From NCBI RefSeq assembly GCF_964204865.1, contig NC_135263.1:11284001-11348000 (forward strand): 64,000 nucleotides of DNA, read 5' to 3'. This document shows, in pieces, positions 6,601-45,900 of the stretch; position 1 is the first letter of the stretch; each line of letters opens with the position of its first letter. Source of the DNA: Styela clava (lineage: Eukaryota). The position numbers and the translations under genes were made by a program. The notes beneath the pieces were generated by a model. It was not told where the DNA came from and did no database searches. It saw nothing but the letters and a program-made list of their open reading frames with translations.

Positions 6601-9600
6601 TAAGTAAAATGAAAATGGGAAACAGTAATGTAAACGTAGTATTGTTCACGATAAGGTTGAAATAAATTCAAGGCATAAAACATAATGCATACTTAATATT
6701 AATATATTTGAATTCAAATGAAATAATACCGCTACCAAAAAATATTAGTAAGATTTGTTATGTTGTAGTCTAACGGGGATTGAGTTTATAGGATATTATT
6801 GTCCGATGGAGAGAAAAAAATTGTACGCACTCGGCAAAATCGAAGTTGGGTATTTCTAAGAGTGCTTTTCGAAACAAAATGTATTTTTTATTAAATCTGG
6901 TATTGCGTTAAAATATCTATTTATGAAAGAGTGGGGTTCTATTCAATTCATTCATCGCAATGCCATTGTTTTTGAATCCTTATCATCCAATTTTAAATTG
7001 GATAGTATTAAATAGTAGTAACACTTCTTTTTTAATTAAATATATTATATTCCATCGTTTTACTTCCTATTTTAGATTACATCAAACGACGTAACATAAT
7101 ATAAGCAGAGGCTATTAATGTTTCAAATAACGCCACAAAAAATAAAAATAAAATACCTCTAATACGACACTTGGTGGCCCCGCGAGCAGCGGTGCTGGGT
7201 TATCCGCAGGCGACGGAACGTAACTAGAGCTTCCAGCATCGCCTCGTCCGCCCCGTCTAGATTCCGTTACGTAGAGCAAAGTTCCCCCATAAGAACCAAC
7301 TTTATCTCCTAGATACTGAACCGGTGCAAACCAGTACAAACTGGGTCTGGTCGAGTCTTTTATACCGCCGTTTGCTTCAATATCAACAGTTGCGGTTTGG
7401 CCTTCAACGAGTACTTCTGGAAAGTCCCTATTATGATGATAAATGATTTTTAGCTCTTGAAAAATCGAATAACGTCGACTGTCCTTTTAATAGCAATTGT
7501 AATAATGTAATGATTAGTATTTGATTGTGTGTTCAAGCTTTTCTCTCTATACTAAAATACTTAAATATAGAGAGCTGCTAGATGGAGGCCCTTTCCTATC
7601 CTTTGCAATGATTGGTGCACTCCCGGAGATGGAATAGACTTGAGTATATTTGCTATAGGATAGTTGGGATTCGATCCTAGAATCTATTATCTGGGAAACC
7701 AACCAAAGTATAAGCTGCAGCGTATGGGAATACTCCAGATCTTTGTAACTATAAGCTATGCAATGTAAATTGTATTGAGTTATTTATATACACTAATAAC
7801 TTCGCACAAGAAATTTTCAAAATATTGCCAAATCAAATTACAGATGGATAAAAAGCAAATTTCAATAATATATATATTATATCCATTCACTAAACTTACA
7901 AATGCTGCCTGCAATTATATAACCAACAAAAGCAGTAGAAATCTCATACCGGCGAATACAAAAATACAAAATTAACTTGCTTACGTTTTCAAATGAAGTA
8001 AAGTCCAGCCATTCATTTCGATAATTTCCGTTTCAGGGTACAAAGTGCCTGAACATTCGTCAGATGCGCCAAAGCAAAAACATTTAGTGCAGCCCAATGG
8101 ATTCGCGAAATCCATGTGGAAAGTACCCTGGTACAAAAAATGAACTTTTTCGATTAAATTTAAAGTGATGTTATAAAGTAAATAGCAAATAACTTAGACT
8201 ATTATGGCCGAAAAGGGTCTGTGTTTTAGAGTTTTTGAAAATGTTTAAATATGCAATGTCGTCAGTGACATTAACTAGAGGTCCGTACCGACGTAATCCC
8301 TAAAGACGGCAGTTGCGACGTCACAGTTTGAATTTATGATACAATGAAGATTACACATCCAAAATATGGTAATGATTGTTACAATAGTATGTTTGCTACT
8401 GATGTGTCTCTTATATTTTCTAATAATATTTCAATATGGCTTGATATCAAATTGTGGTCAAATAACCAATCACTCACCGATTTACATCTGTCACATTGTT
8501 GTCCTTCTACATTATCTTTACATAAACATTGTCCATTGACATGATTGCATACCTGTGAAACACTCCCGCGTGGATCACATTCGCAAGGTACACAATCAGG
8601 GAAAGCAAAAAATCCAGGTTTACATTTATCGCACCTAAAAAAAATATTGAGCTAAACTAAATATATTATACAGTAATTTTGAAGTATTTTTGATTTAGAT
8701 CCCAGAACAATGTCCAATTACTGTTTATTTCATTCTAGGAAAATTGCCTAAATCAGCCTCTTGCATAAAAAAGCACGTGTAACACATTTGAAATTGATGA
8801 TGATAAACCACTCAGTACAAAATAAAACAAATTTCAACGAGGGAATGCAAGCCCAAAAGCATCTACAACTTTCATTTAGGTATGTAGTTACCAACATAAC
8901 TCTCAATATTTGTAATAACAGTCTAAGGTAACCTCGGAATAGGATTGTGATTCTTAGCACGTCTTGACTGTTAACCAGACAAAATTTTTATGGATAATTG
9001 GTGATATTGTACAGATGAAGTGTTCGGCACTACTTGTCGAAAATATTAAAATAATTTTATTTTAACGACCGAATGTGCACTGGTAAATGGCGTTCAATAA
9101 CTGATCTTGCTGTGGGATTACGACTTCATATAACCCGATCGAAAACTCGCTCTTATATTCTCAAAATTCTGGTCACCAGCAGTCAAACTTTTTAAGTTTT
9201 TCCACATTTCGTTGGTGTTTACTGAGTGAGAGTAAATATGTGGCTTATTTACATTTTTGGAAAAAAAATAATTTGACAAACATAGAGTACTATCTTAGAC
9301 AACGGTTACCAGTCAAAACTAATGACAACCGTTGAATAATTCCAATCGGTTAACCAATTATACTTAGGAACAATCCATTTGTTTTCACTATATACTACAA
9401 CTATTTCGATCAGGTAATAAGACGCGAATATAATCATACATATGTCCTTCCACATTTTCTTTGCATCGACATTGTCCATTCTCTTCACTACATCCAAGAT
9501 CTTTAGCATCTTCCACTCCTTTTCTATTACAATCACAAGCAAGACATCCAGCAAGAGGATGAAAGGAATGAGTAAAAGGCAGACAACGATCACATGATGG

Positions 9601-24520: not shown

Positions 24521-24903
24521 CCAGACAGGCCCGAAAATTAACAATTTGAATATATATGAGTGATCGCAGCCCCAACTGACGGTACCTTATAATAGTTTAC
24601 TAGATTAAGTTGAGGCCGGTTTTGTATGATTTTTCATTTTATTCGTGTCTTGGCTTGGTGGGCAACAAATAAAACGCGGTGGGTCACAAAGGGCCAGTGG
24701 TTCGCCATCCCAGACAGGCCCGGAATTAACCATTTGAATATATGTGAGTGATCGCAGCCCCAACTGACGGTACCTTATAATAGTTTAGTTTACTAGATTT
24801 AGTTGAGGCCGGTTTTGTATGATTTTTCCTTCTATTCGTGTCTTGGCTTGGTGGGCAACGAATAAAACGCGGTGGATCACAAAGGGCCAGTGGTTCGCCA
24901 TCC
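24521..24903. repeat. Near-identical direct tandem duplication of about 190 bp
   Basis: Unit 1 (24521-24709) and unit 2 (24710-24903) both run ccagacaggccc...gatcgcagccccaactgacggtacc...cacaaagggccagtggttcgccatcc. Confidence 0.9.
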
Positions 24904-25025
24904 CTCCACCTAAAAAAAAGTTTTATGCACAAAAGGACTGCTGTCTTGTTTGATACCCATACTGAACTACAATCCGAAGCAGAAGTAAACTTGAATCAAG
25001 AAAACCAAATAGTATTGAGATTAGG

Positions 25026-25298: not shown

Positions 25299-26114
25299 TT
25301 ACCAATCCATTTGAGCAACGCGCTGAGCTTGAACATCATTTAGAGGTGCTTGTTCCATTGGTGGAGGAGGTGGATTTGCTGGAACCGAGCCGGCCCCACC
25401 TGCAAACAAGCCCCCTTTCATGACCGCAGACACAACGGCAGCAAAAAGAACCACGCCTACAATAACTCCGATAATGATGAGAATGGCTGGTACAACACTG
25501 GAGGATGCCACATCATCTTCAGCAAAATTTTGAGCCTCTTCTTTTGGATCACCATAAGCCTCTGCTTTTAGTTCTCCAGGTACATCATCTTCGACTGATA
25601 TAGGTTCATCAGCTGTTTCAGTGTCGTCCGATTCTATGTCAGCGTTGCTCCCTACTTGTTCATTTTCGTTCTTTAAAGTTTCACCAACAACCTCTTTCGA
25701 ATTTTCCATTTCTATATCAACTTCTTTGATATCAATTACTTCATCACCCATGCCAGTTTCTTCTTCCAGAACAATCTCGACATTTTCTTCTTTGATTTTC
25801 AGTTTTGGATCTTCAAGTGGTGGATCAACAACAACTGTTTCTTTAAGTATGTCTATCGATACTTTCTCATTTGGTTTATCGTTGGCAACTGGTTTTTCAG
25901 AATTTATCATTGAATCATCGAGATTACCAATTTCTTTACTGCTAACATCTGCATTCTTATCCATCAGTCCTGTATCCGTATCATCAAGTTTTCCATCAGA
26001 TTTTAAAACCGCTTCATCAGGATCATCAGGTACATAGATGAGACGTGCATCTTCTATATCGAAAGTACGCGGCGGTCGTACTTCTTCAGTTTCAACCACT
26101 GGTTCCTCCACACC
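25299..26114 (-). CDS. Alternative terminal exon of gene A: acidic stalk, transmembrane helix and Pro-rich cytoplasmic tail
   Basis: Acceptor ttttgaag|GGTGTGGAG at 26114 is phase 0 and in the frame of ORF 25299-26162. It matches the phase-0 internal donor GATGAG|gtacca at 27954. The exon encodes about 205 aa of D/E/V/K-rich sequence, then VVPAILIIIGVIVGVVLFAAVVSAVM (about 25419-25496), then KGGLFAGGAGSVPANPPPPPMEQAPLNDVQAQRVAQMDW*. It has no ATG-led signal peptide of its own. Confidence 0.8.
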   Translation of the reverse strand, partial: GVEEPVVETEEVRPPRTFDIEDARLIYVPDDPDEAVLKSDGKLDDTDTGLMDKNADVSSKEIGNLDDSMINSEKPVANDKPNEKVSIDILKETVVVDPPLEDPKLKIKEENVEIVLEEETGMGDEVIDIKEVDIEMENSKEVVGETLKNENEQVGSNADIESDDTETADEPISVEDDVPGELKAEAYGDPKEEAQNFAEDDVASSSVVPAILIIIGVIVGVVLFAAVVSAVMKGGLFAGGAGSVPANPPPPPMEQAPLNDVQAQRVAQMDW

Positions 26115-27472
26115 CTTCAAAACATTGAAAAATAATTGTAAATCAAAAGCAAGATTTGACAATAACGAATAAATTATACCAAAATTTTCACTCTAATTAA
26201 TTACTCACGACATGGATGAAAAAATCAATTTTTTTTCATCCATTTAAATTGTGTGTGATTGAATCAAATCACAGTCGATCCGTATCAAGATGCAGTGAAT
26301 GAAGTCTTTTCTGAAGACGCATGATAGTAGACTTCAACATGCTTCCGAGCATGAAGCAGACAGAACCAGCGCTCTATTAGTTGCAAGCTTCAGCACATTA
26401 GTTTGAAGCGTAGATGATAGAAGCATGCACACATTATTAGTAAGTTGACAGCTGCGAAGTTGCATTGAAAATATGTATTCAACACCTCATGACCACAAAT
26501 TGTATTGTTTGATTCAATCCAGATAATTTTATTTCAAATTTCTAATTGATAATTGAAAAAGCACACACAAAATTGATGAAATTTGGCAAATGAATTTGAA
26601 ATAATTTACAAATTCAAAACACTGGGCGACGAATTATAAAGTAAATAAACAAATCGCTGATGCTAGAATCGAAAATATCAATTCTTAATATCAGGGCAAA
26701 CTTTAAAAAATGAAAAATTATTTGAATTTTTATGGGTCATGTAAAAATCCCTAAGATAAAAGTTAACACGAGATGTATCCAGTGAATACTAAAGCTACAG
26801 AGAATACTAAAACAAAGCAAAACAGAACTACTTATGCTGATCGAGAAGGCTAAAAAGGAATATATACAAATGGGAATGTGCTTCAATACCATGGTAAGCA
26901 AAAGGACAAGAGCTACATTTACATAGTTTAAAAATGCTGGACGTTTAAGTACAATCGGAGTTGTGTCCAAAAGTTTAAAAAAAAAACAAGATCGTTCCAG
27001 AAAAGTGATTTATAAAAGATAGAATTTGCAAAACAGTTCACAATTTTTTCGGTCCTATTCGGAATGTACATTTTTGTGCACAACATGAATATTATCAAAA
27101 GAATCAATCAATGATATCAATAGTGGAATATCAAATAACCTTAAAAATGCCTGATCAAGTATACCATGTATAACCATATCATCAAGATGTGATTGATCTA
27201 CTGCTAACATTAATAATATCGCACTATACTACTACATTTCTTTGGATTCTAACATCTAGCAGGCTGGATATGTTAATCGATATACATATGCATTCATTTA
27301 GTGTCACCCATATTTAAATGTTTTGTTAAAACACCATCATGTGTTGCAATGAACTTCAAATATATAGGGAACACTGTTTTGACATGAAGCAAGAATACCT
27401 TAGTCAAATTTTTAATTTATGATGTAACAATATCATAATTTAGAAACCCTTGTCGCATATTAAAACAGTGTA

Positions 27473-27941: not shown

Positions 27942-30900
27942 TCATTTTGGTACCTCATCTGGTGGCACAATATCTGGTACTACAGTTGCTGCCAGTGGAG
28001 TAGGTTCAGGTTCTCTTGCTAGTCCTTCCATATTTTCAACATTGGGATAATTGTCTGCTATGCTAATAAATCCCTCATCTTTGGCGTCAATGGGCGGAAT
28101 GTCCTAAATAAAGAAATAATAAGAATTATTTTATTGATTAAGAGTATGTGAGCCGTGACGATAATTCATTTCTATCATTTATAAAAAAAGGTTTCATACA
28201 TCTCCATCACATCCAGGGGTGACTCCGATTCTTTCGTAAGCTTCGTAAATATTGAAAGTATATCTTCTATGGAAAGATAAGTCTCTGATGCATCCGCGGT
28301 AGTTTGTATTGATGTTCTTTACATATTGACTAAATCTGTAAAAAAAATATGAAGTTTAACGTTGAATAATGATTTACTTTTCCCACAAAAATTCGAATAA
28401 AAAATCAGTTTAACTTACTCTTGTTTGATGTCATTTCTATGAATTCCGCCAAACCAGACATCGCCTTGAATATTTGGTGACCAATCCGTGAAAGTCATGT
28501 TTATGCTGAGCCTGTTGTGAATTGTGATGAAACATTTGTTAATACAAAAAATGATGTTGGTTCACTAAATTATGTTTAATTGCATTTTATATTAGAGCGT
28601 TTTACTTTTTCAAACTCTTGTCAAAATATATTGTTGTGTAGTTTCTCATTTGCATTCTGGACTTATAATAATAGGTACAAAGTTCTAATCTAAAACAAGC
28701 CAAGATTCTTATTGAACTGACACTGTATATGTCCTCATAATCAAATAATAACGAGCCCAAACTTATACTTACTCAGTGTTGAGGACCAAAGCAATCATCT
28801 TTACGTTTCTGCCAACATTAACTATTCCGATCTTCACGTTGAAAGCTTGTGCAATGGTGGATACATCTGGGTATGTGTCAGTGCTGACTCCTTCTTTAGG
28901 TTCATCCCAACCAAAATTGCAAGACAAATGCAATTTTCCATCTCTAATTTCCAAAGCAAAGAATTGATCCTAAAATGATAATGAGAAGTAGAAAATTTTA
29001 TTCACTGTATTCAAATGTGACATTTGGCAATTGTTATTACTGTGAATATAAAAATAACATACCACGCTCTGTCCGACGAAAAGAAGCAGGCCATCATGTT
29101 GTTTAGTCAAAAATTTGAAGCTAACAAAGCTGATTCCAGTAGTATCTGCATAGGAATTTAGTTGGCGAAGTTGTGTTTCACTTGCTCGAATGTAACTGTC
29201 AACACCTCGGAAACGCCAATATCTATTGCTAGTTGAAACGCTGAGTGGTGATTTGCGTCTGAAATGAAAAAAAGAGCATAAATTAGGGAAATGAAAGATA
29301 CTAGGATAAAAAATAAAAACATATGTTTAGTATCCATAATGTCAATCAAGCAACAAAAAATTAGATTTCAAAATAAGCAAACAGATATCGGATTTGACCG
29401 TTCAGACCAAGAAAATCTAAAACAATTTATTCTTGATGAGCGTCCAGTCCTAGAAAAAGTTTTGACTAAATCTTGATTCATGTTTCCATAACTAAATACG
29501 TTATCCTCTCTTAGTATAACAAGGTTTGTTACAACTCACCCTTCTCCAGCACAGGTTTGACCAGGCTTTGGACCATTGTATGAAACAAAATTCCAGAGTC
29601 CAACACTTTCATCATTAACTTTAACACCCTCAATACATCCAGTCATTTGATTGTTTTGTATTTTTCCTGGTAGCTGTTAGTAGAAGTATATATGTTAGAG
29701 ATTTGGTATGATTGATAATTATCTAGTTTAGCATTAAATTCATTTCCTCATAGTAATATTGAAATACAAATATCTTTATGAATATCTTTAGGTAGCTAAT
29801 TGAAACCATTTCAAATTTATATCTTACATAATTTCTTACAAAAATTCTGAATAATATACCGGTAAGTGAAAATTTGTCAGAAGATATAAAAAAAATTCTA
29901 ATCACCTCCAATCACGAATACGCTTATTGAAAAGTCATTTCATGACTATATAAATATATTCATGCATTTATAAATTTAAAATAAAACTACATGCAACTAC
30001 ACCATTTAATTTAATGACATCTGAATTTCCAGTTCAGTATAGTACTAGGACAAATTAATGACTTTGATAAAACTATAAATAGTTTTGTACCGGCATGGGT
30101 GGCAAACCACCAACAACAAATGGCGTTGTCTCCCTTGGTAGAGACGATTCTATTTCAGCTGCATCTGTTTTTCCAGTCTGGACTTTACTAGTTATGGCAC
30201 CAGAATTAAACAAGTCTCCACGCCCTTCTATAGGATTAGGGTAAAATACTTCCAGTGATGCATCATTTCCATTTCTGCAGAGAAAATGATGAAATGAGAA
30301 TATAACACAAGATGACATTGTGAAGGTGAAAAATGCACCTATGTTCAGTATATCATAAAATGTATTATGGTATCTCTGTTTGTCATGATGTTGCACGTGT
30401 ACACTGTTAAACATAACCATGTTTTATGTGTGCCATTTAGTCTTGTTCATAGTACAACTCAGAAACTGAAACTGCTTTAGTAATGTTACTTGTTTTGTAA
30501 AGAAGTCATTTCCATCATAACTCCCAGAGTTAACTTTAGCACAAAAAACTAGCTTTGCACTAGATATTTGCTCAGATGGGTGCCTTTGTTGTTATGTACA
30601 GATGAGTATATAGGAGAAGATAAGTCAAGTGTGGAAATGAAGATTTGATTAAGATAACTGCTTTGAAAGAGATTAATAGGATGACAAAAAAATGCAGATA
30701 GCTTGAGAAGAATGATCATCCATATTTCAAAATTTGATGCTCACAGCTGATGACGCTTGTACATGTAAACAAACTGTTTATACAATGACATATGTGATGA
30801 TGAGATGTCAGTGTTTTAAACATTACTGTTGTTTGGCTGGTTTCGAAGGGGTGTCATAGTTCTACCGTTTCAGGCAGTTTTTGATACATCAAAACACGCC

Positions 30901-33900
30901 AACCCATCATAAAATCACCAAAACTTAAATTATGATGATGACTTCTGCTACACTATGAAATATTGCTTCATTTCTGATATCTTCAACATTGTGAGTGCAC
31001 AAATGCTGTGCAACTTCACTCATTCACCAAATCCACTCATATCACCATACAACTTTCACCATTACATACCACTGGCAATGGATTGCCCCCTAACAAGAAG
31101 ATGGTCTTGTGGGAGACCAGCCTTTCTGGTGCACCAGGCAAATAATCCGCCCTTGTTCTTCTATGGCGGCCTCTACGATATCCATCAAGGTTGAAAACTT
31201 GTAGTGATCCAATCTTGTTTTTTTTTCTTTGTTTATTAAAATGTGTTTATGTGTTATGTGTTCGTACAAACGTGGATAAGTTTAAAACTACGAGGTAACA
31301 AGATTTTATATAATTAAATGATGCACCTTCAAATAATAACCCAATTTTATTTCTGATTTTCCAGCGAATTACACAGATTCAGAGAATTAGTGAAAATATA
31401 AAACTTTGACACTATTACTTTATTCAACTTCACATACCTTTCTATGACAATACGATGCCACGTTTCATCATTGATTGCTGGATGTGTACCAATAATTTCA
31501 CCAACACCAGATCCAACTTTATAATAATAGTGTACTTTGCCTCCAATAGTTTCCAAAGCGATGTAATCCCCAGAAGCAGTCTGTAAACAAGTAGGAGTGA
31601 TATAACACCATTTCTTATATAAAATATCTTTATGCTTTATATATATATATATATTATACATACTGAAGCATCTCCTAAGTATAAGAGAGAATTGTCTGGT
31701 GATTTTGAGATGTTGACGTACATTTCAATCTTGATGTTGTCACTGAGATCAAATGACTGTGGTGGGATGTGAACTTGTGCATATTCAGGCTTGGCATCTG
31801 CAGCAGCAAGAGGTACATGCTTGAATTGCATTGATACCTTGACCTGTAAAACAGAATGTTCTATGTTGAGATTCACAATGAAAAACAGAAGCTTCAGAGA
31901 GTAAAATTTCATTGAGTCAATAAAAAATTTTGCCTCATAATTTTGTTATCCAAGTCGTCATTCAAAATTATGCAAGGTACCAGTTTTTAACTTACGCTGT
32001 CAGCACGGCTTCTTGACAATTCAATCTTCTTTCTTATTTCACCTATTTTTTCATCCAATGCAAGATCTTTAGGAAGTAAAGCGATTCTAGCAGCACGTCG
32101 ATTAAGCTCTTCCACTTGTGCGTTCATATCAGCAATTTGGTCGGGTAGATCAGCCACTAAAATGACAATTTAAAATGTGAATCAAACGGGTGACAAAATC
32201 AAATCCTATTTAACATAACTAATGCATTTGTAATATGATTAGAAAACTTGGAAAGCGCCCATTACCGATATGAAAACTAATCCTAAATTCCTCTCCGTTA
32301 ACAAAATGGTCTTTTAGCATGCCATATGCTTTTTCTCAACTACAAACTTATTCAATCTGTGTCATTTAATAGCTAACTGTTACTTTTGCATGGGGAACTG
32401 AGAAACAGAGCCAATCTGACACTTACATATGTCTTGAACATCAGTTAGCTCTTGATTAAGTGGAATATTTGGATCAGGAGCTTGGTCAATCTTGTCTTGT
32501 AATTGTTGTGCTGCTCTCAAAGCATCATCAGCAATATCTGAAGCTGCTGCTGCATCTTCTTTTGTTTTTTGTATTTTGGCATCAATATCACCTGAATGAA
32601 AAAAAAATGAGTATAGGCATTTGAAGAAACATGTATGTGTGCTGAATAAATCTGAAAGCTTTTGTGAATGTTACATCTTTCATACATAGAAAATATCACA
32701 ATATGATATTTTCTTACCATGATCTAAAGTAGTAGCACCATCTTTCACTGCTTCCATTCTTTTAGAGAGATCTTTTGCCAAAGAATCCATTTCCTGAGAA
32801 CTCTTCTTGGCAGCCTATTAAATATATTGAATATATGTCTATGTCAAATCTTGTTTCATTAATTGAATGTTAAACAGCATGTACCATCATATATATCATT
32901 CAACTTACATTAAGATCATTCTGAAGATCACCAATTTTGGTATTGAGAATATCTTGTACTTCATTGAGAAGTTTCCCACTGGCAACATTTGCTTCATCAG
33001 CTGCTTTACCTAAATTCTTTTCAGCTACATCGTCTCTTGCTTCTGTAGCATCCTACGAGAATAATACAAATTTTTTACCACAAAATTCTTCATAATTTTC
33101 CTTGTAAAAATATGTTAAAAGTTGGTATTATTGCTGGTCATTTTGTATTTCATCAGATATAAATTTAAACTTACCAAATCTGCCTTGTCAGCTGCCTCTC
33201 GTGCATTTTCCATAACATTGATAATATTCTGATATCTGTTTGCAGCTTCGACTGCTCTAACATTACGAGGATCATTCTTTGTTTCTTCAACCAGTTGTGA
33301 AAGCATATCGGCATCATTCTTCAACATGTTAGCTTTTTCAATAGACTATAGAATAAAGAAATTTTGATCAATAATCAACAAGGATGCATAAAGACATCAA
33401 AACTAAGCAAGTTTAGCTGAAAACCAGCGAAAAGGACTGCTGAATATTATTGACTAAAACTGCATCTTGTGTAAAATTGAGACTAGTCAGGTAAATTTTG
33501 ATTTCGAAAGCAGGCATAAATATGGGTTACGTTTCACTGACCGACTAAATCACTAGATATTTGAGAACACTTTATTACTGGCAAGTAATGCAAAAAACTA
33601 ACCATATTGACAAGTTCCTCCATTCCTTCTAATCCCACAACATAAGCATCATAAACAGGTTGAAGTTGATCAATAGCTTCGAGTAAAGCATCGCTGTCCA
33701 ACACACCAGGTTCATCAATACCACCTCCATTTAACACATTCTGTGCATCACCAATTATTTGATTGATTTCTTCAAATTCAACAGTAATTCCTGTAAAAAA
33801 ACAAAATATTGATGTGATATTCAACCAACTAAATCAAAACCCGCCATGAAATAACAAATTAGACACTTACTGTTAATGGCATCTCTGCCTGCTGTGAGTG

Positions 33901-36900: not shown

Positions 36901-39900
36901 GATCCTAAATAATAATATTTCAATTAGGAACAGTGCTATATAAAAACTTTGAGATAGAAAATTAATCATATGTATACGGTATCTTTCATTCAATATATCG
37001 AATATAACTTACTTCGACATCCTCAGAGCGGTCCGCGAAATCTTCAAGTCTTTTTGCTGCTGCAACTCCAACTGATACTTTTGACAACTTAAGACTGGCG
37101 CTAGCTACTTTTTCCGTCATTGGCTCAATGGTGTCAAGAAGATCATGTGTACAGGTGTCACAGCCTAAAAACATCCAAAATGTTCTTCAGTAATGTGGCA
37201 TATTGAAATAAGCCCTAACTTTTATAAGTAAATATGTATATACTCACTTTCACATTGAAGACCGCCTGGTGGTAGAATGTGACGTTCCAGTTTGCATTGG
37301 TCGCATTGAGGGCCAGTGATACCTGGTGGACATTTGCATTCGCCATTGACCGGATTACAATCTCCATTGTTTCGACAATTGCAGGCTAAAAATATATGAG
37401 AGTGTCAGACTTCCATGAACATTCATGTCAATTTTTTTTAATTATTTGCTGACAGAAGATTTTAGAGGAACAAGAAAAGATGAAACTTTGTGTTGAAAGT
37501 TTGAACTTCTCTTTGTTGCAGGTTTAGAAACCTTCGACAAATTTAAGTGCCGACTGGGTTGGAACATTGTTGAAATTTGGCACAGAGTGCTGATGGAAGT
37601 ATCAAAATGTAATAATTAATGCTGCTGTGGTTTTGTGGACATGTTGGAAAACATGGCAGAGATGGTAAAGGGAACTATTATATATAAAAATAGGGACATG
37701 TTGGAAATCAAGAAACAAGTTTAATTATTATTCATTTGTGGAAATAAAGCCTGTTGCACTCACGTTTGCATCCCATGGATGAGTAGTCCCAGTGCCCTGG
37801 TGCACATTTGTCACATTTCAGTCCGACAACATTTGGTGCACATTCACATGCTCCAGTCACAGTATCACACTCATTGTTTCTAGCACCAATCCCACAGCTG
37901 CAGTCTTGACAACCAATGCAGGAATCCAAATTGTAATATCCTATTAAAAAAAATGTCATGGTAAAAAAAAATCAGTTTATAAAATTTGTAATTGCAATTC
38001 TACGATGCTCGGTACTAACCTGGCTCACAACGGTTACATGAGATACCAATAACATGAGGCTTGCAAGCACAGAATCCATATGTATGATCACATTGCAGAG
38101 TACCACATTCATTGCATGGACATTTGGTACAGTTCTTGGCAATTTTGGCATCTCCAAAAAAGCCATCTGCGCATCTTTCACAGTATTTTCCACCAGTATT
38201 GTACAAGCAGTCTTTGCATTCACCTAGAATGAATGACAAAATTGTATCATATCATAAGTCTATATAACGGAGATTTAGAAAAAAACCGCATTATTTTGAA
38301 AGAAATATATAACTTACCACTTATCGGATTGCAAATTTCCATCACCAAGTTAAAATCAAGGTTTCCATGGCAATTGCACTGTTTACAATCTCCACCGATA
38401 ACTGATGGGTTTCCAAAATATCCGAGAGCACACTGGTCGCACTTTTCTCCTGTGTAACCAATCTGGCAGTGACAGACAACATCACCATCTGGAAAAATGT
38501 TATAAACATAAATTTTGGATCAGTAATCGGGACAAATTGACCAATAATAAACAAAATGACAATTTTCCTACCTTCATCATATTCACAAGACTCTGCGAAA
38601 TTTCCATCTTCTGATGGGAATGGACATGGACAAGGCTGGCAAGCATCTGGATCTCCAGTAGTTGCATCTCCAATGTATCCATCTTTACATTTTTCACAAT
38701 TTTCACCAGCCTATAATAAGTTATGTATAAAAATGAGCATTTTCTGCGTACAATATGGATGAGATAATTAATTTTGAACATCGCCATAAGAATAATATTT
38801 TGAGAAAAAAATTACCGTATTATGAAGACAATCCTTCTTGTCAATCAATTCACCATGTTCATCACAAGTTTCACAATGTCCATAACAATGGCACTCTGCA
38901 CAATAACCCAAATAAGGTCCACGATTTTCTCTAAAATGTCCACTGTCACACAATTGGCAAGACTCTCCAGTGTATCCTTAATAAAATTTAATTTTTTAAC
39001 TTGTGATTCCTACTAATAAATTAAAAACTGTCTTGAGTTGTTCTATTTTTTAAAAATGTACCTTTGGGGCAGCGGCATTCCTCAACGGTTGGTATAGTTG
39101 GACCTGATCCGAGTTCAGCATCATAATCAGTAGTTGACATACTAACATCCGAAAGCCTGACGATGGCTGCATCTGGATCATCAGTAGCATGGATACGCAA
39201 TTTTGACAAAGGACTAAGAACCATCATCATTTCTTCACGTTTCACTGGGTTTCCTACATTAAAAAATACATGAGTTTTATAACAGCTAAAATATTGAAAA
39301 ATAAATGAACAACTTAGTTGTATGTTATAGTATAGAAAATACTTACCAGTGCTTTGATGAACAAAATTTGATTCAGTCAAGTTGAGGAATACTGATTCTC
39401 CATTCTGTTTGTTTCTGTTTATCCAGCCAACAACCATACCATTGCCCTGAAGTAAAACACAATTGGTTAAATCAAAAGCACAAACAAAACTCAGTTTTAA
39501 TAGTTAGGTTTTAATATTATACAATACTAACCTCCAAAATGACTGTTGGATTTGGAGCAGTTAGAGGAGCAGGTTGATCTCCGGCGACCGAAACAAATGT
39601 ACCAGTGCTGTCTCCTCGTCCACCTTGTTCTGAAGTGGTAATGAAGTGTAAAACGCCACCATAGGATCCAATTTGGTCATTCAGATATGCTTTTGGTGCA
39701 GCCCAATACAAGTTGGTTCTGGCAGGTTCTTTAGCTCCTCCATTTTCATAGATATCCACGGTAAGAGTGTTACCATCACTCTGAATTTCTGGTGTATCTC
39801 TGTAATAATGTTTAAAAGATTTAGCAAGCTAAAAATTCTGATATAATAAAGGGATATATTGAGGCACATACGTTTTCAAATTCAAAAGCCGCCAGCCTTC

Positions 39901-42900: not shown

Positions 42901-45900
42901 CAAAGCAAAACGAAATCCAAAAATTTATTACCAAGGATGTCATATAAAATAGGTAATTGTACACATGAATTATACTACAAACTAGCGAAAAGAAAAATAT
43001 TAATAGAAAAAACATTCAGTATTTATAACCAATCTATAATAGGTTGAATTATCGAAATCAGAGACAAAAAATGATTGATAGCAAATCAGTCCAAGACATA
43101 ATTTAAATACCAACCTGGTTCGCCTTCAATAATGATGTTCCATTCTCCACGATTAAGAACAAATACGCTGTTAGCAGTCATCAAAGCTGGACTTTGACTT
43201 GGTTCAAAATCAACAATAAATTTTTGCTCCGAACCTAAATTAGTAAGAAGAATTATTCACAAATGTTCATTTGCTATGGGGTTGAACAAAAATAATCATG
43301 GAAAGCACTCCACAAAGTGACAACAACATAAACATGCATTTTGTGATGAAACACCATAATTAATATTGAAATAAAATGAATGTAATTCTTCAATCAACGA
43401 CACCTAGACTTCTATTTTATTTAAATTTGATTATCTATTACCGTATATGGTCTTACCATCAGCTGTTACCGGTGAAAGAGTGACATTTGCTGAAGTTGTG
43501 CCATCGGGTTGAACGTAATAAAAGAGCACTCTGTACAGACCATAACTCTCCACATTGACTGGTACAATGATTTTACGCTGTGCCAAATCAAACATATGAC
43601 AACATGCAGTTTATTGTAATCATGCATTTATCCTAATGTACTAATAATATTCCTAAACTTATCTTGGGTCTATGAATCTGGGATACTGTCTTCATTGGAT
43701 GATGTGCAATATTTGTGCATCAAATATAAAACAAAAGACATGCAGAGAAAATTCAACTTAATACCATGCAGTATTTATGTTGTGTTGGAGGTCAAAAATA
43801 TGATTACCATTTACCAATCCGAGATGTCCAGAGAATTCAGTTTAAATATAATTTGGTATCAATAATTTTTGAATAAGATATTTTCGAAAATTTATATAAT
43901 CAGAATCAATGTTATATAAACATGTTTCGAATTTTCAAATTTTTCATCATATTTCCAATTTGTGATTAAATAAAACAGCTATGCAAAGCTGTAATGTCAT
44001 AAAATCAAAGTTGTTAGTAATGTGCTCTCATGCAAAACAAAATAGTCAAAAGTGTGTGGATGGACAGACGCATTAAAATAAACATTTCCATTTGCCATGG
44101 TTCGTGCACTGGAAACTCACAATTGGGGCATAGAGGTTCTGCGTCACTGTCATCATCAGTAGAAGTTTTCGGAACAAAGGAAATAGTGGAAGAAAGAACC
44201 CATGAATGAGGGTTGACATAGTACATCAGTATTTTATACAAGCTGTTCTGTGTTATAGTCAGATCCAACACAGCTTTTGGCTGAGCAAGAAATAGAGAGA
44301 TTGGTAAAATCAAAAGCCAATATGATTATCTAAATAACATATTGTGAAAGAACATAAAACAAAAAAGTAGAACCATGTTTCATATAATATACATTGTACT
44401 TTCACTAAAATTAATGCTATGAGAAGGAATAAAAATTCAACTTATGAAATGAATTTCGATAAAGAATTCAGAAATTAATTTTAAACTTGTTTATATTATG
44501 TATACATATACACTGGTGTAATATGCATAGTAAAATATTTATATTGTCAGTACATTTAAAACTATAAATTGTTATTTCTCAGAAAAATAAACAAATTTTA
44601 CTTTGAACTAAAATACTAAATTTACCAAGAAATATCACAGTAGCATGCTTTAGAGAAGTTATGGTTAAAAAAAACTCTATGAAAAACTTTGAAAGGTAAA
44701 TAGGAAAAAAGAAATAGATTTGTGAATATATTTCCCAAACAGAACAGATAGATGTAAAACAATTTAATACACATTTAATTGCACATTTATGAGGATTTTT
44801 GGGGGGATATTCTACCTTTACTAGATGTATATCATTAAATAGAGTATTTGGTCACATACTATTTTAGCTTTATTATGATATAAAAACTAATGACTGTTAC
44901 CTTATTTACATACTTTCTTATTGTTATCGAAATAGCTTTTAGCTGTTTATACAAAAGCACATACCTGGACAAGAGAAAATTCTCCATAACCTTTCATACT
45001 GAAAGCTGGAAAATGTTCTCGATTGAAACCAAAACGCAAGATTTGGTCTTCAGTTGTTTTGCCATCTTCAACCTCAAATCTATGCTGAAGTAGAGTTGGG
45101 TAGTAGTAGCCTTCAGCAACACTGAAATCAGTAAATAAATTAAAATTAATATAGTGAGAGTAGAGAAATATACACAAGTGATAACCTTTTATAAAATAAT
45201 ACCAATTAGTATCGTACCTATCACATTTTCTGCCTGTTACTCCTTCTTTACAACGACATTGCCCATCTACTGTGTCACAATCCTCTGTCATTGCACCACC
45301 AGCATCACACTGACATCCAGTACAACCAAAGTAATGGCTTTCCTCAAGTCCAAAAAATCCATCATCGCACTGAGAGCATCTTTGAGTGCATGTATAGGGT
45401 TTGCACCAGCAATCACCAAACTGAAACAAAAAAGATTTAATAAGTCCCATATTTTATGAGGTAAATGGCTATGCTATGCAGCTCCCTGTATGATAAAAAG
45501 TGGGCCTAAGACTGATCTCCATATTTGGTAACTTAATTAACGATGGCTCGTTAGCAGATATTCATTAGATTCACTTGTCATGGTCTATCATTGGTTAAAT
45601 TTTAGCAAACAATAAACAACTTACCTCTGTATCGCAGGCAGCAACACCATCGAGTGTTCCCTGGAGAAAGCAATTACAATCAACACATCCGAGTGTTAAG
45701 TTATAATGCAGGGGACTGCATTCATTACAATACTTTCCAACAACATTCTCTTTGCAGTCGCATTGGCCCTTAATTCAAAATAAGTGATTCAAATAACAGT
45801 TATCAAAATGTAACCTTAATTCCAACCACAATGTAAATATCACTTACGGTGGTGAAAGCAAGACAGACGCCTGGTACAACAGACTTGATCCCTCTTGGAT

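What the first reader, a model, noticed from the sequence alone, without database searches (positions are those of the whole stretch)
30091..31226. Mutually exclusive LG1 exons switch an RGD loop for a polybasic (heparin-binding or furin-site) loop
Seen: two exons with the same phases (2 to 0) encode the same part of LG1. Exon 31226-31070 gives [23 protein letters not shown]...[11 protein letters not shown]. Exon 30274-30091 gives [21 protein letters not shown]...[11 protein letters not shown], with RGD at 30214-30222. Including both shifts the frame. The variable motif lies in the same loop after the SLxV strand. Known: RGD binds RGD-class integrins, Arg clusters bind heparan sulfate, and R-x-x-R (RHRR, RRTR) is the proprotein convertase consensus. 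Inference: splicing toggles receptor class. Alternatively the basic exon adds a cleavage site that could shed the membrane-anchored form. The first exon is missing from the ORF track.
Basis: partly seen in the sequence, partly recalled or inferred. Interest (0 to 1): 0.85.

Follow-up and report, generated by a model that had tools for sequence, protein, structure and literature searches.

The report
Candidate alternative LG1 exon in laminin
A sea-squirt laminin alpha gene has, just upstream of a normal exon of its first LG domain, a diverged and still open copy of that exon that could be used in its place. I could get no RNA evidence, so its use and the proposed receptor switch remain unproven.

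Summary
The sequence facts hold. On the minus strand, exon B (30274-30091, RGD at 30214-30222) and candidate exon A (31226-31070, polybasic RRGRHRRTR at 31151-31177) both fit between the LG1 exons 31580-31438 and 29673-29540. Both run phase 2 to 0 and both have length mod 3 = 1. Only A-alone or B-alone keeps the frame.

B is a real exon. It has a strong acceptor and a 39-42% identical counterpart in the tandem paralogous laminin gene, which has PGD where B has RGD.

A is very unlikely to be a chance ORF.
- Its end-anchored identity to B exceeds all 770 decoy pseudo-exons.
- Its GC content (0.459) is reached by 1.3% of non-coding windows.
- It is single copy, and its donor is good.

Against A:
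- Its acceptor is very weak.
- The paralog has no counterpart.
- BLASTP, Pfam and hhalign do not link it to B.

My reading is that A is a diverged tandem duplicate kept as coding sequence, probably a regulated alternative mutually exclusive with B (about 0.5). The rivals are a recently dead relic (about 0.3) and chance (below 0.1). The integrin versus heparin/furin toggle is untested. The earlier scan note that names the genome Styela clava was not checked here.

The parts
31438..31580 (-). Upstream LG1 exon ([10 protein letters not shown]...WHRIVIE + AG), phase 0 to 2
   Evidence: Pfam Laminin_G_2 E 1.9e-07, profile positions 17-61. It has a 54% identical counterpart in the paralog. Acceptor 9.8 bits, donor 10.9 bits.
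31070..31226 (-). Candidate exon A, 157 nt, phase 2 to 0, 52 full codons with a polybasic stretch
   Evidence: The frame is open only from 31246 to 31040. Donor 7.08 bits, acceptor 1.59 bits. GC 0.459 against 0.27 and 0.34 in the flanking introns, which is reached by 1.3% of non-coding windows. End-anchored identity to B is 4/12 and 5/12, above all 770 decoys. Single copy in the genome. No transcript evidence.
31151..31177 (-). RRGRHRRTR polybasic stretch in exon A, holding the overlapping R-x-x-R motifs RRGR, RHRR and RRTR
   Evidence: Purine-rich AGA/AGG/GAA codons. A role as a cleavage site, a heparin site or a splicing enhancer is inference only.
30091..30274 (-). Exon B, 184 nt, phase 2 to 0, 61 full codons, the default LG1 exon
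   Evidence: Acceptor 8.34 bits, donor 2.49 bits. The paralogous exon lies at G000:C18:11276969-11277127, E 2.4e-5, 42% identity. Global z 10 against the paralog.
30214..30222 (-). RGD tripeptide in exon B
   Evidence: The aligned paralog residues are PGD.
29540..29673 (-). Downstream LG1 exon ([21 protein letters not shown]...), phase 0 to 2
   Evidence: 60-63% identical to the paralog exon. Acceptor 8.2 bits, donor 8.5 bits.

Best explanation
Exon A is a diverged tandem duplicate of the LG1 exon now represented by exon B. It has been kept as protein-coding sequence and is most likely used as a regulated, probably minor, alternative that is mutually exclusive with B. Exclusivity would come from reading-frame logic: both exons are 1 mod 3, so including both or neither gives an early stop, and such transcripts would be lost to nonsense-mediated decay. 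Choosing A instead of B would replace roughly the last third of the LG1 beta-sandwich before the Cys-containing strand. That segment runs from the L-x-V strand to the GG-x-P strand and includes the intervening hairpin and the long rim loop. The swap would exchange a long acidic/neutral loop carrying RGD for a shorter, strongly basic one. Shown here: the geometry, the phases, the stop codons, the composition and the homology signal. Inferred: the splicing itself, the decay of non-productive forms, and any change in ligand binding.
For: - Phases and frame logic come directly from the sequence.
- End-anchored identity of A to B is 4/12 at the N end and 5/12 at the C end. Among 770 phase-compatible open AG..GT decoys, 2 reach 4 at the N end, none reaches 5 at the C end, and the highest sum is 6 against 9 for A.
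- In a control over 27 real exons with their flanks of 1.5 kb on each side, the A-B pair is the top pair (z 3.67) and the only one with a positive raw score.
- Eight of the 10 identical anchor residues use different codons, and third positions differ at 10 of 12 sites in the C-terminal anchor. This fits conservation at the protein level.
- Only 4.1% of intronic 52-codon frames are open, and the A frame closes 7 codons upstream and 10 codons downstream of the exon.
- GC is 0.459, which 1.3% of non-coding 157-nt windows reach, whether or not they are stop-free.
- The donor scores 7.08 bits, the 98th percentile of decoy GTs.
- The region is single copy and is not a repeat.
- The same gene holds a second, clearer tandem exon pair of the same design in L4a, with z 6.2.
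- A paralog-conserved real exon, L4a_down, has an acceptor that scores lower (-0.59) than exon A's 1.59.
Against: - There is no transcript evidence of any kind.
- The acceptor (1.59 bits) is below all 72 training acceptors and only at the 78th percentile of random AGs. It has no pyrimidine tract.
- Frame compatibility depends on a run of nine A directly after the acceptor, so a length error in the assembly would break it.
- The tandem paralog has one exon here and an upstream intron of only about 200 nt.
- BLASTP finds no A-B alignment. hhalign finds only an 11-column match with P 0.014. Pfam does not recognise A, but it does not recognise B either.
- A small LG profile built from S. clava LG domains ranks A 303rd of 615, but the profile is weak: it ranks B 3rd at only 2 bits.
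- The codon-usage score of A (0.163) lies between real exons (0.37 +/- 0.18) and open intronic frames (-0.09 +/- 0.17).
- No protein among 1.84 billion representatives contains an A-like segment.
Confidence: 0.5

Rival explanations
1. Exon A is a relic. It was once a functional duplicate of the LG1 exon, recently lost its acceptor, and is no longer spliced. It has not yet accumulated stop codons.
For: The acceptor is the weakest of all those scored and has no pyrimidine tract. The A-rich run at the exon start looks degenerate. There is no counterpart in the paralog. No annotated or predicted protein was found that contains it.
Against: The frame is still open across exactly the exon, the donor is still good, and the GC content is still exon-like. 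These features decay quickly in 32% GC introns, so the death would have to be recent. Real exons of this gene can have acceptors that score as low.
Confidence: 0.3
2. Exon A is a chance open frame in the intron that happens to have compatible AG and GT sites and a few LG-like residues.
For: Standard tools see no homology. Local alignment scores are at shuffle level. About 700 phase-compatible pseudo-exons exist in the window, and the statistic that separates A from them was chosen after seeing the data.
Against: None of the 770 decoys reaches A's end-anchored identity. A-B is the top pair in the 27-exon control. The GC island has p about 0.013. The donor is at the 98th percentile of decoys. 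A lies in the intron directly next to its look-alike.
Confidence: 0.07
3. Exon A is spliced, but mainly together with B as a frame-breaking 'poison' exon that lowers laminin output through nonsense-mediated decay, not as a protein-coding alternative.
For: A followed by B stops after three codons. A's strong donor and B's strong acceptor would favour joining A to B.
Against: A poison exon needs no open frame, no LG hallmark residues and no exon-like composition, yet A has all three.
Confidence: 0.08

Closest known systems
Agrin splice site A/y (KSRK insert in LG2)
   Same: Alternative splicing changes a surface loop of an LG domain by adding a short basic stretch. That stretch creates a heparin-binding site and lowers alpha-dystroglycan binding, and it lies in the long J-K loop next to the Ca2+ rim (PMC6450144).
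   Different: In agrin it is a 4-residue cassette insert shown experimentally. Here a whole 52-61 residue segment would be swapped by exon choice, in a laminin alpha LG1, and nothing has been shown at the RNA or protein level. The basic stretch here follows the L-x-V strand directly, so it may lie in the I-J hairpin or strand J and not in the J-K loop. That placement was not determined.
Laminin alpha2 LG3 RRKRR furin site
   Same: A polybasic R-x-K/R-R motif in a surface loop of a laminin alpha LG domain. [quoted passage not shown]
   Different: That site is constitutive and sits in the D-E loop of LG3. Here the motif is in LG1, in a different loop, would be present only in one splice form, and has not been shown to be cleaved.
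Mutually exclusive exons that arise by tandem exon duplication
   Same: Neighbouring exons with the same phases, the same length class mod 3, homologous ends, and frame loss if both or neither is included. This description is from my own knowledge of the class. The L4a pair in this same gene is an internal example by sequence.
   Different: The defining evidence is missing: transcripts that hold exactly one of the two exons. The A-B similarity is much weaker than in typical described pairs. No intron-intron RNA pairing above shuffle level was found.
Neurexin LNS-domain splice sites (SS2-SS4)
   Same: Splice-dependent loops on LG/LNS domains that gate ligand choice (own knowledge, not tested here).
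   Different: Those are cassette inserts in a different protein family, with demonstrated ligand effects.

Membership tests
Mutually exclusive exon pair from tandem exon duplication | Adjacent exons between the same flanking exons, with identical start and end phases | tested here: met
   Both run phase 2 to 0. They are 157 and 184 nt, both 1 mod 3, and lie between 31438 and 29673.
Mutually exclusive exon pair from tandem exon duplication | Sequence homology between the two exons | tested here: inconclusive
   End-anchored identity is above all 770 decoys and global z is 3.1-3.7. BLASTP finds nothing and hhalign gives P 0.014 over 11 columns.
Mutually exclusive exon pair from tandem exon duplication | Functional splice sites on both exons | tested here: inconclusive
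   A: donor 7.08 bits, acceptor 1.59 bits, which is below all 72 training acceptors. B: acceptor 8.34 bits, donor 2.49 bits. One real exon scores -0.59.
Mutually exclusive exon pair from tandem exon duplication | Including both or neither destroys the frame | tested here: met
   A+B reads KWK-stop. Skipping both reads [10 protein letters not shown]-stop.
Mutually exclusive exon pair from tandem exon duplication | Transcripts contain exactly one of the two exons | not testable with these tools
Mutually exclusive exon pair from tandem exon duplication | Both exons conserved in related species | not testable with these tools
Two metagenome scans found nothing. The in-genome paralog has only the B type.
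Laminin G (LG) domain | Match to the Pfam Laminin_G profiles | tested here: inconclusive
The upstream exon matches PF02210 (E 1.9e-07) and PF00054 (E 2.1e-06). Exons A, B and the downstream exon give no hit alone.
Proprotein-convertase (furin) cleavage site | R-x-K/R-R consensus | tested here: met
   RHRR followed by T, and RRTR followed by A.
Proprotein-convertase (furin) cleavage site | Exposed in the folded, secreted protein and actually cleaved | not testable with these tools
   No fold of the spliced LG1 was made. Testing this needs a protein experiment.
RGD integrin-binding motif | RGD tripeptide present | tested here: met
   30214-30222.
RGD integrin-binding motif | Conserved among relatives | tested here: not met
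   The paralog exon has PGD at the aligned position.

The most novel reading that the evidence does not exclude
A tunicate membrane-anchored laminin alpha chain uses mutually exclusive LG1 exons to switch the ligand-binding rim of LG1 between an RGD-bearing loop and a polybasic loop that binds heparan sulfate or can be cleaved by furin. Splicing would then decide which receptors the anchored laminin engages, or whether it is processed.
Probability: 0.1. Interest if true: 0.65.

Novelty: new member of a known kind. Interest (0 to 1): 0.35.

Why it matters
Three full-text paper searches found no described case of a laminin alpha LG domain remodelled by exon choice. The known splice-regulated LG loops are in agrin and neurexins. 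If exon A is used, this gene would show that a laminin can change part of LG1 by splicing. LG1 belongs to the LG1-3 region needed for integrin binding (PMC2755686). Together with the L4a pair, it would mark this tunicate laminin as a multi-site mutually exclusive exon gene. Without transcript data it is a well-formed hypothesis and not a finding.

Tried and rejected
- **RNA evidence.** I re-sent a stretch under 6,000 bases once, guessing that size was the problem.
- **Cross-species DNA.**
  - Two metagenome scans with alignments of the flanking exons found no relative.
- **Protein databases.**
  - Exon A against 1.84 billion representatives gave only a spurious repeat protein.
  - Exon-sized queries in the search for homologous proteins found no candidates, even for the conserved upstream exon, so that blank is uninformative.
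- **PDB by sequence.** Exon A gave only chance ribosomal hits, and exon B gave none.
- **ESM Atlas.** Nothing usable came back for either exon.
- **LG profile.** An 8-sequence profile built from this genome had no discriminating power.
- **Structure.** A single-sequence fold of a one-exon LG domain from this genome (L006), meant to map the strands, gave pLDDT 34 and was discarded.
- **RNA pairing.** Intron-intron pairing as an exclusivity mechanism got no support. Inverted repeats were at chance level, and duplex z-scores were -0.1 to -1.8.
- **Alternative acceptors for exon A.** Positions 31213 and 31197 are out of phase and score worse.
- **A relic of exon A in the paralog's introns.** None was found: 218 of 500 shuffles scored as well.
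Full report
**What is there.** The window carries a laminin alpha-like gene on the minus strand. It has LN and LE exons at about 53-37 kb, a coiled coil at 37-32 kb, LG exons at 31.9-28.4 kb, and a last exon with a transmembrane segment at 25299-26162. I did not check that.

A second, colinear laminin alpha gene starts at about 21686 on the same strand and runs past the start of the window. Exon-by-exon comparison gives 40-95% identity along the whole length.

**The four LG1 exons.** LG1 is encoded by exons at about 31.9-31.66 kb, at 31580-31438, at the position in question, and at 29673-29540.
- The exon 31580-31438 matches Pfam Laminin_G_2 positions 17-61 and ends in phase 2.
- Exon B (30274-30091, 184 nt) and candidate exon A (31226-31070, 157 nt) each supply the third base of that codon and end in phase 0.
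- A followed by B reads KWK-stop. Skipping both reads [10 protein letters not shown]-stop. Only A-alone or B-alone is productive.

**Exon B is real.** Its acceptor scores 8.34 bits on a matrix built from 72 acceptors of the two paralogous genes. Its donor is weak at 2.49 bits. It has a clear counterpart in the paralog at G000:C18:11276969-11277127, with 39-42% identity and global z 10. The paralog has only this one exon between its flanking LG1 exons, and its upstream intron is about 200 nt. At the RGD position the paralog reads PGD.

**Is exon A more than chance?** Standard tools do not link A to B.
- BLASTP gives no alignment.
- hhalign gives an 11-column match with P 0.014.
- Pfam recognises neither exon on its own.
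- A small LG profile from this genome had no power.

The likeness is confined to the two ends: SLQVF against SLEVF near the start, and T-x-F-x-x-GG-x-P at the same distance from the end. These are the LG hallmark positions (L-x-V and GG-x-P).

Tests designed for that pattern separate A clearly from background.
- End-anchored identity is 4/12 and 5/12. Of 770 open, phase-compatible AG..GT decoys from the window and 10 kb beside it, two reach 4 at the start and none reaches 5 at the end. The largest sum is 6 against 9 for A.
- Global alignment z is 3.1, with 6 of 2000 shuffles as good.
- In a control over 27 real exons and their flanks, A-B is the best pair and the only one with a positive score.

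The end-anchored statistic was chosen after seeing the data, so I do not take its p-value literally.

Independent features point the same way.
- A's GC is 0.459, against 0.27 and 0.34 in the flanking introns. Only 1.3% of non-coding 157-nt windows reach that.
- Only 4.1% of intronic 52-codon frames are open.
- The frame closes 7 codons before and 10 codons after the exon.
- The donor GTG|gtatgt is at the 98th percentile of decoy GTs.
- The stretch is single copy.
- Eight of the ten identical anchor residues are encoded by different codons. This fits conservation at the protein level and not recent copying.

I conclude that A derives from the same ancestral LG1 exon as B.

**Is it used?** This is the open point.

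Against use:
- The acceptor (aataaacaaag|A) scores 1.59 bits. That is below all 72 training acceptors and only at the 78th percentile of random AGs.
- The paralog lacks an A copy.
- Nothing A-like occurs in 1.84 billion representative proteins. That blank is weak, because isoforms collapse into one representative.
- Frame compatibility depends on a run of nine A right after the acceptor.

For use:
- The intact frame, the good donor and the exon-like composition would decay quickly in these AT-rich introns.
- A paralog-conserved real exon of this gene (43577-43442) has an acceptor that scores -0.59, lower than A's.
- Several real acceptors here are AAG with A-rich tracts.
- The same gene has a second tandem pair of the same design in L4a: 44280-44121 and 43577-43442, both phase 0 to 1 and both 1 mod 3, with z 6.2. 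Again only the downstream copy has a counterpart in the paralog.
- The purine-rich AGA/AGG/GAA codons of the polybasic stretch could double as a splicing enhancer for the weak acceptor. This is inference only.

I put about 0.5 on a regulated, mutually exclusive coding exon. I put about 0.3 on a recently dead relic, below 0.1 on chance, and below 0.1 on a poison exon.

**What I could not do.**
I did not try again, so read laying was never used.
I therefore could not fetch the DNA around two relatives of the membrane-anchor exon, P0002 and P0003.
- The position of the motifs in the fold is therefore inferred.

**Function.** By LG topology, the swapped segment spans the strand carrying L-x-V, the following hairpin and strand, the long J-K loop and the strand carrying GG-x-P. 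The fold has strands A to N, and the J-K loop contributes Ca2+ ligands at the ligand-binding rim (PMC6450144). My mapping of the motifs onto named strands relies partly on memory of the laminin alpha1 LG4 sequence.

Exon choice would therefore remodel one of the three rim loops and shorten the segment by nine residues.

The polybasic stretch contains RHRR before T and RRTR before A, which are convertase consensus sites. There are two precedents.
- The agrin A/y insert KSRK creates a heparin site in the J-K loop of LG2 (PMC6450144).

The RGD of exon B is not conserved in the paralog. A GGRGD is conserved in the L4b exon of both genes. A specific integrin role for the LG1 RGD therefore has no support here.

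**Verdict.** The sequence observation is right, and exon A is a genuine diverged duplicate. Mutually exclusive use is plausible but unproven. The receptor-class toggle is speculation. If it is real, it is a new member of known kinds: tandem-duplication mutually exclusive exons, and splice-regulated LG loops.

Noticed in passing
window 44121-44280 and 43442-43577, minus strand: A second tandem exon pair in the L4a region of the same gene. The exons are 160 and 136 nt, both phase 0 to 1 and both 1 mod 3, and share the motif LY-x-x-L-x-YYV-x-P. Global z is 6.2, with 0 of 2000 shuffles as good. Only the downstream copy has a counterpart in the paralog. It is a stronger mutually exclusive exon candidate than A/B.
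   Followed up: partly
window 39610-39618 and about 7238-7246, minus strand: An RGD inside GGRGD is conserved in the L4b-domain exon of both tandem laminin paralogs. The LG1 RGD, in contrast, is PGD in the paralog.
   Followed up: partly
window 1-21686 and L005 (G000:C18:11274001-11284000), minus strand: A tandem paralogous laminin alpha gene lies directly downstream, colinear exon by exon at 40-95% identity. It has a single LG1 exon at L005:2951-3127 where the upstream gene has A and B. A further LG match lies at G000:C18:11267976-11268212.
   Followed up: partly
window 25299-26162, minus strand: The membrane-anchor exon has two relatives in public assemblies: P0002 (306 aa, Logan) and P0003 (176 aa, ENA). 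They share the transmembrane segment and the tail ending QAPLNDVQAQRVAQ-I/M-DW, with 66-67% identity over the matched part. Their source organisms and contigs could not be fetched.
   Followed up: partly
window 30302-30319 and 31240-31257: An 18-nt, 78% complementary inverted repeat lies just upstream of the acceptors of exon B and exon A. Pairing would loop out exon A. It is one of 19 similar AT-rich pairs in 2.2 kb, so it is at chance level.
   Followed up: partly
window 31218-31226, minus strand: A run of nine A begins exon A directly after its acceptor AG. The frame link between the acceptor and the open frame depends on its exact length.
   Followed up: no
window 24605-24932, minus strand: Two neighbouring open frames between the two laminin genes encode nearly the same peptide (GEPLALCDPPRFI-x-CPPSQDTN...KNHTKPAST). 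This suggests a short tandemly repeated element.
   Followed up: no
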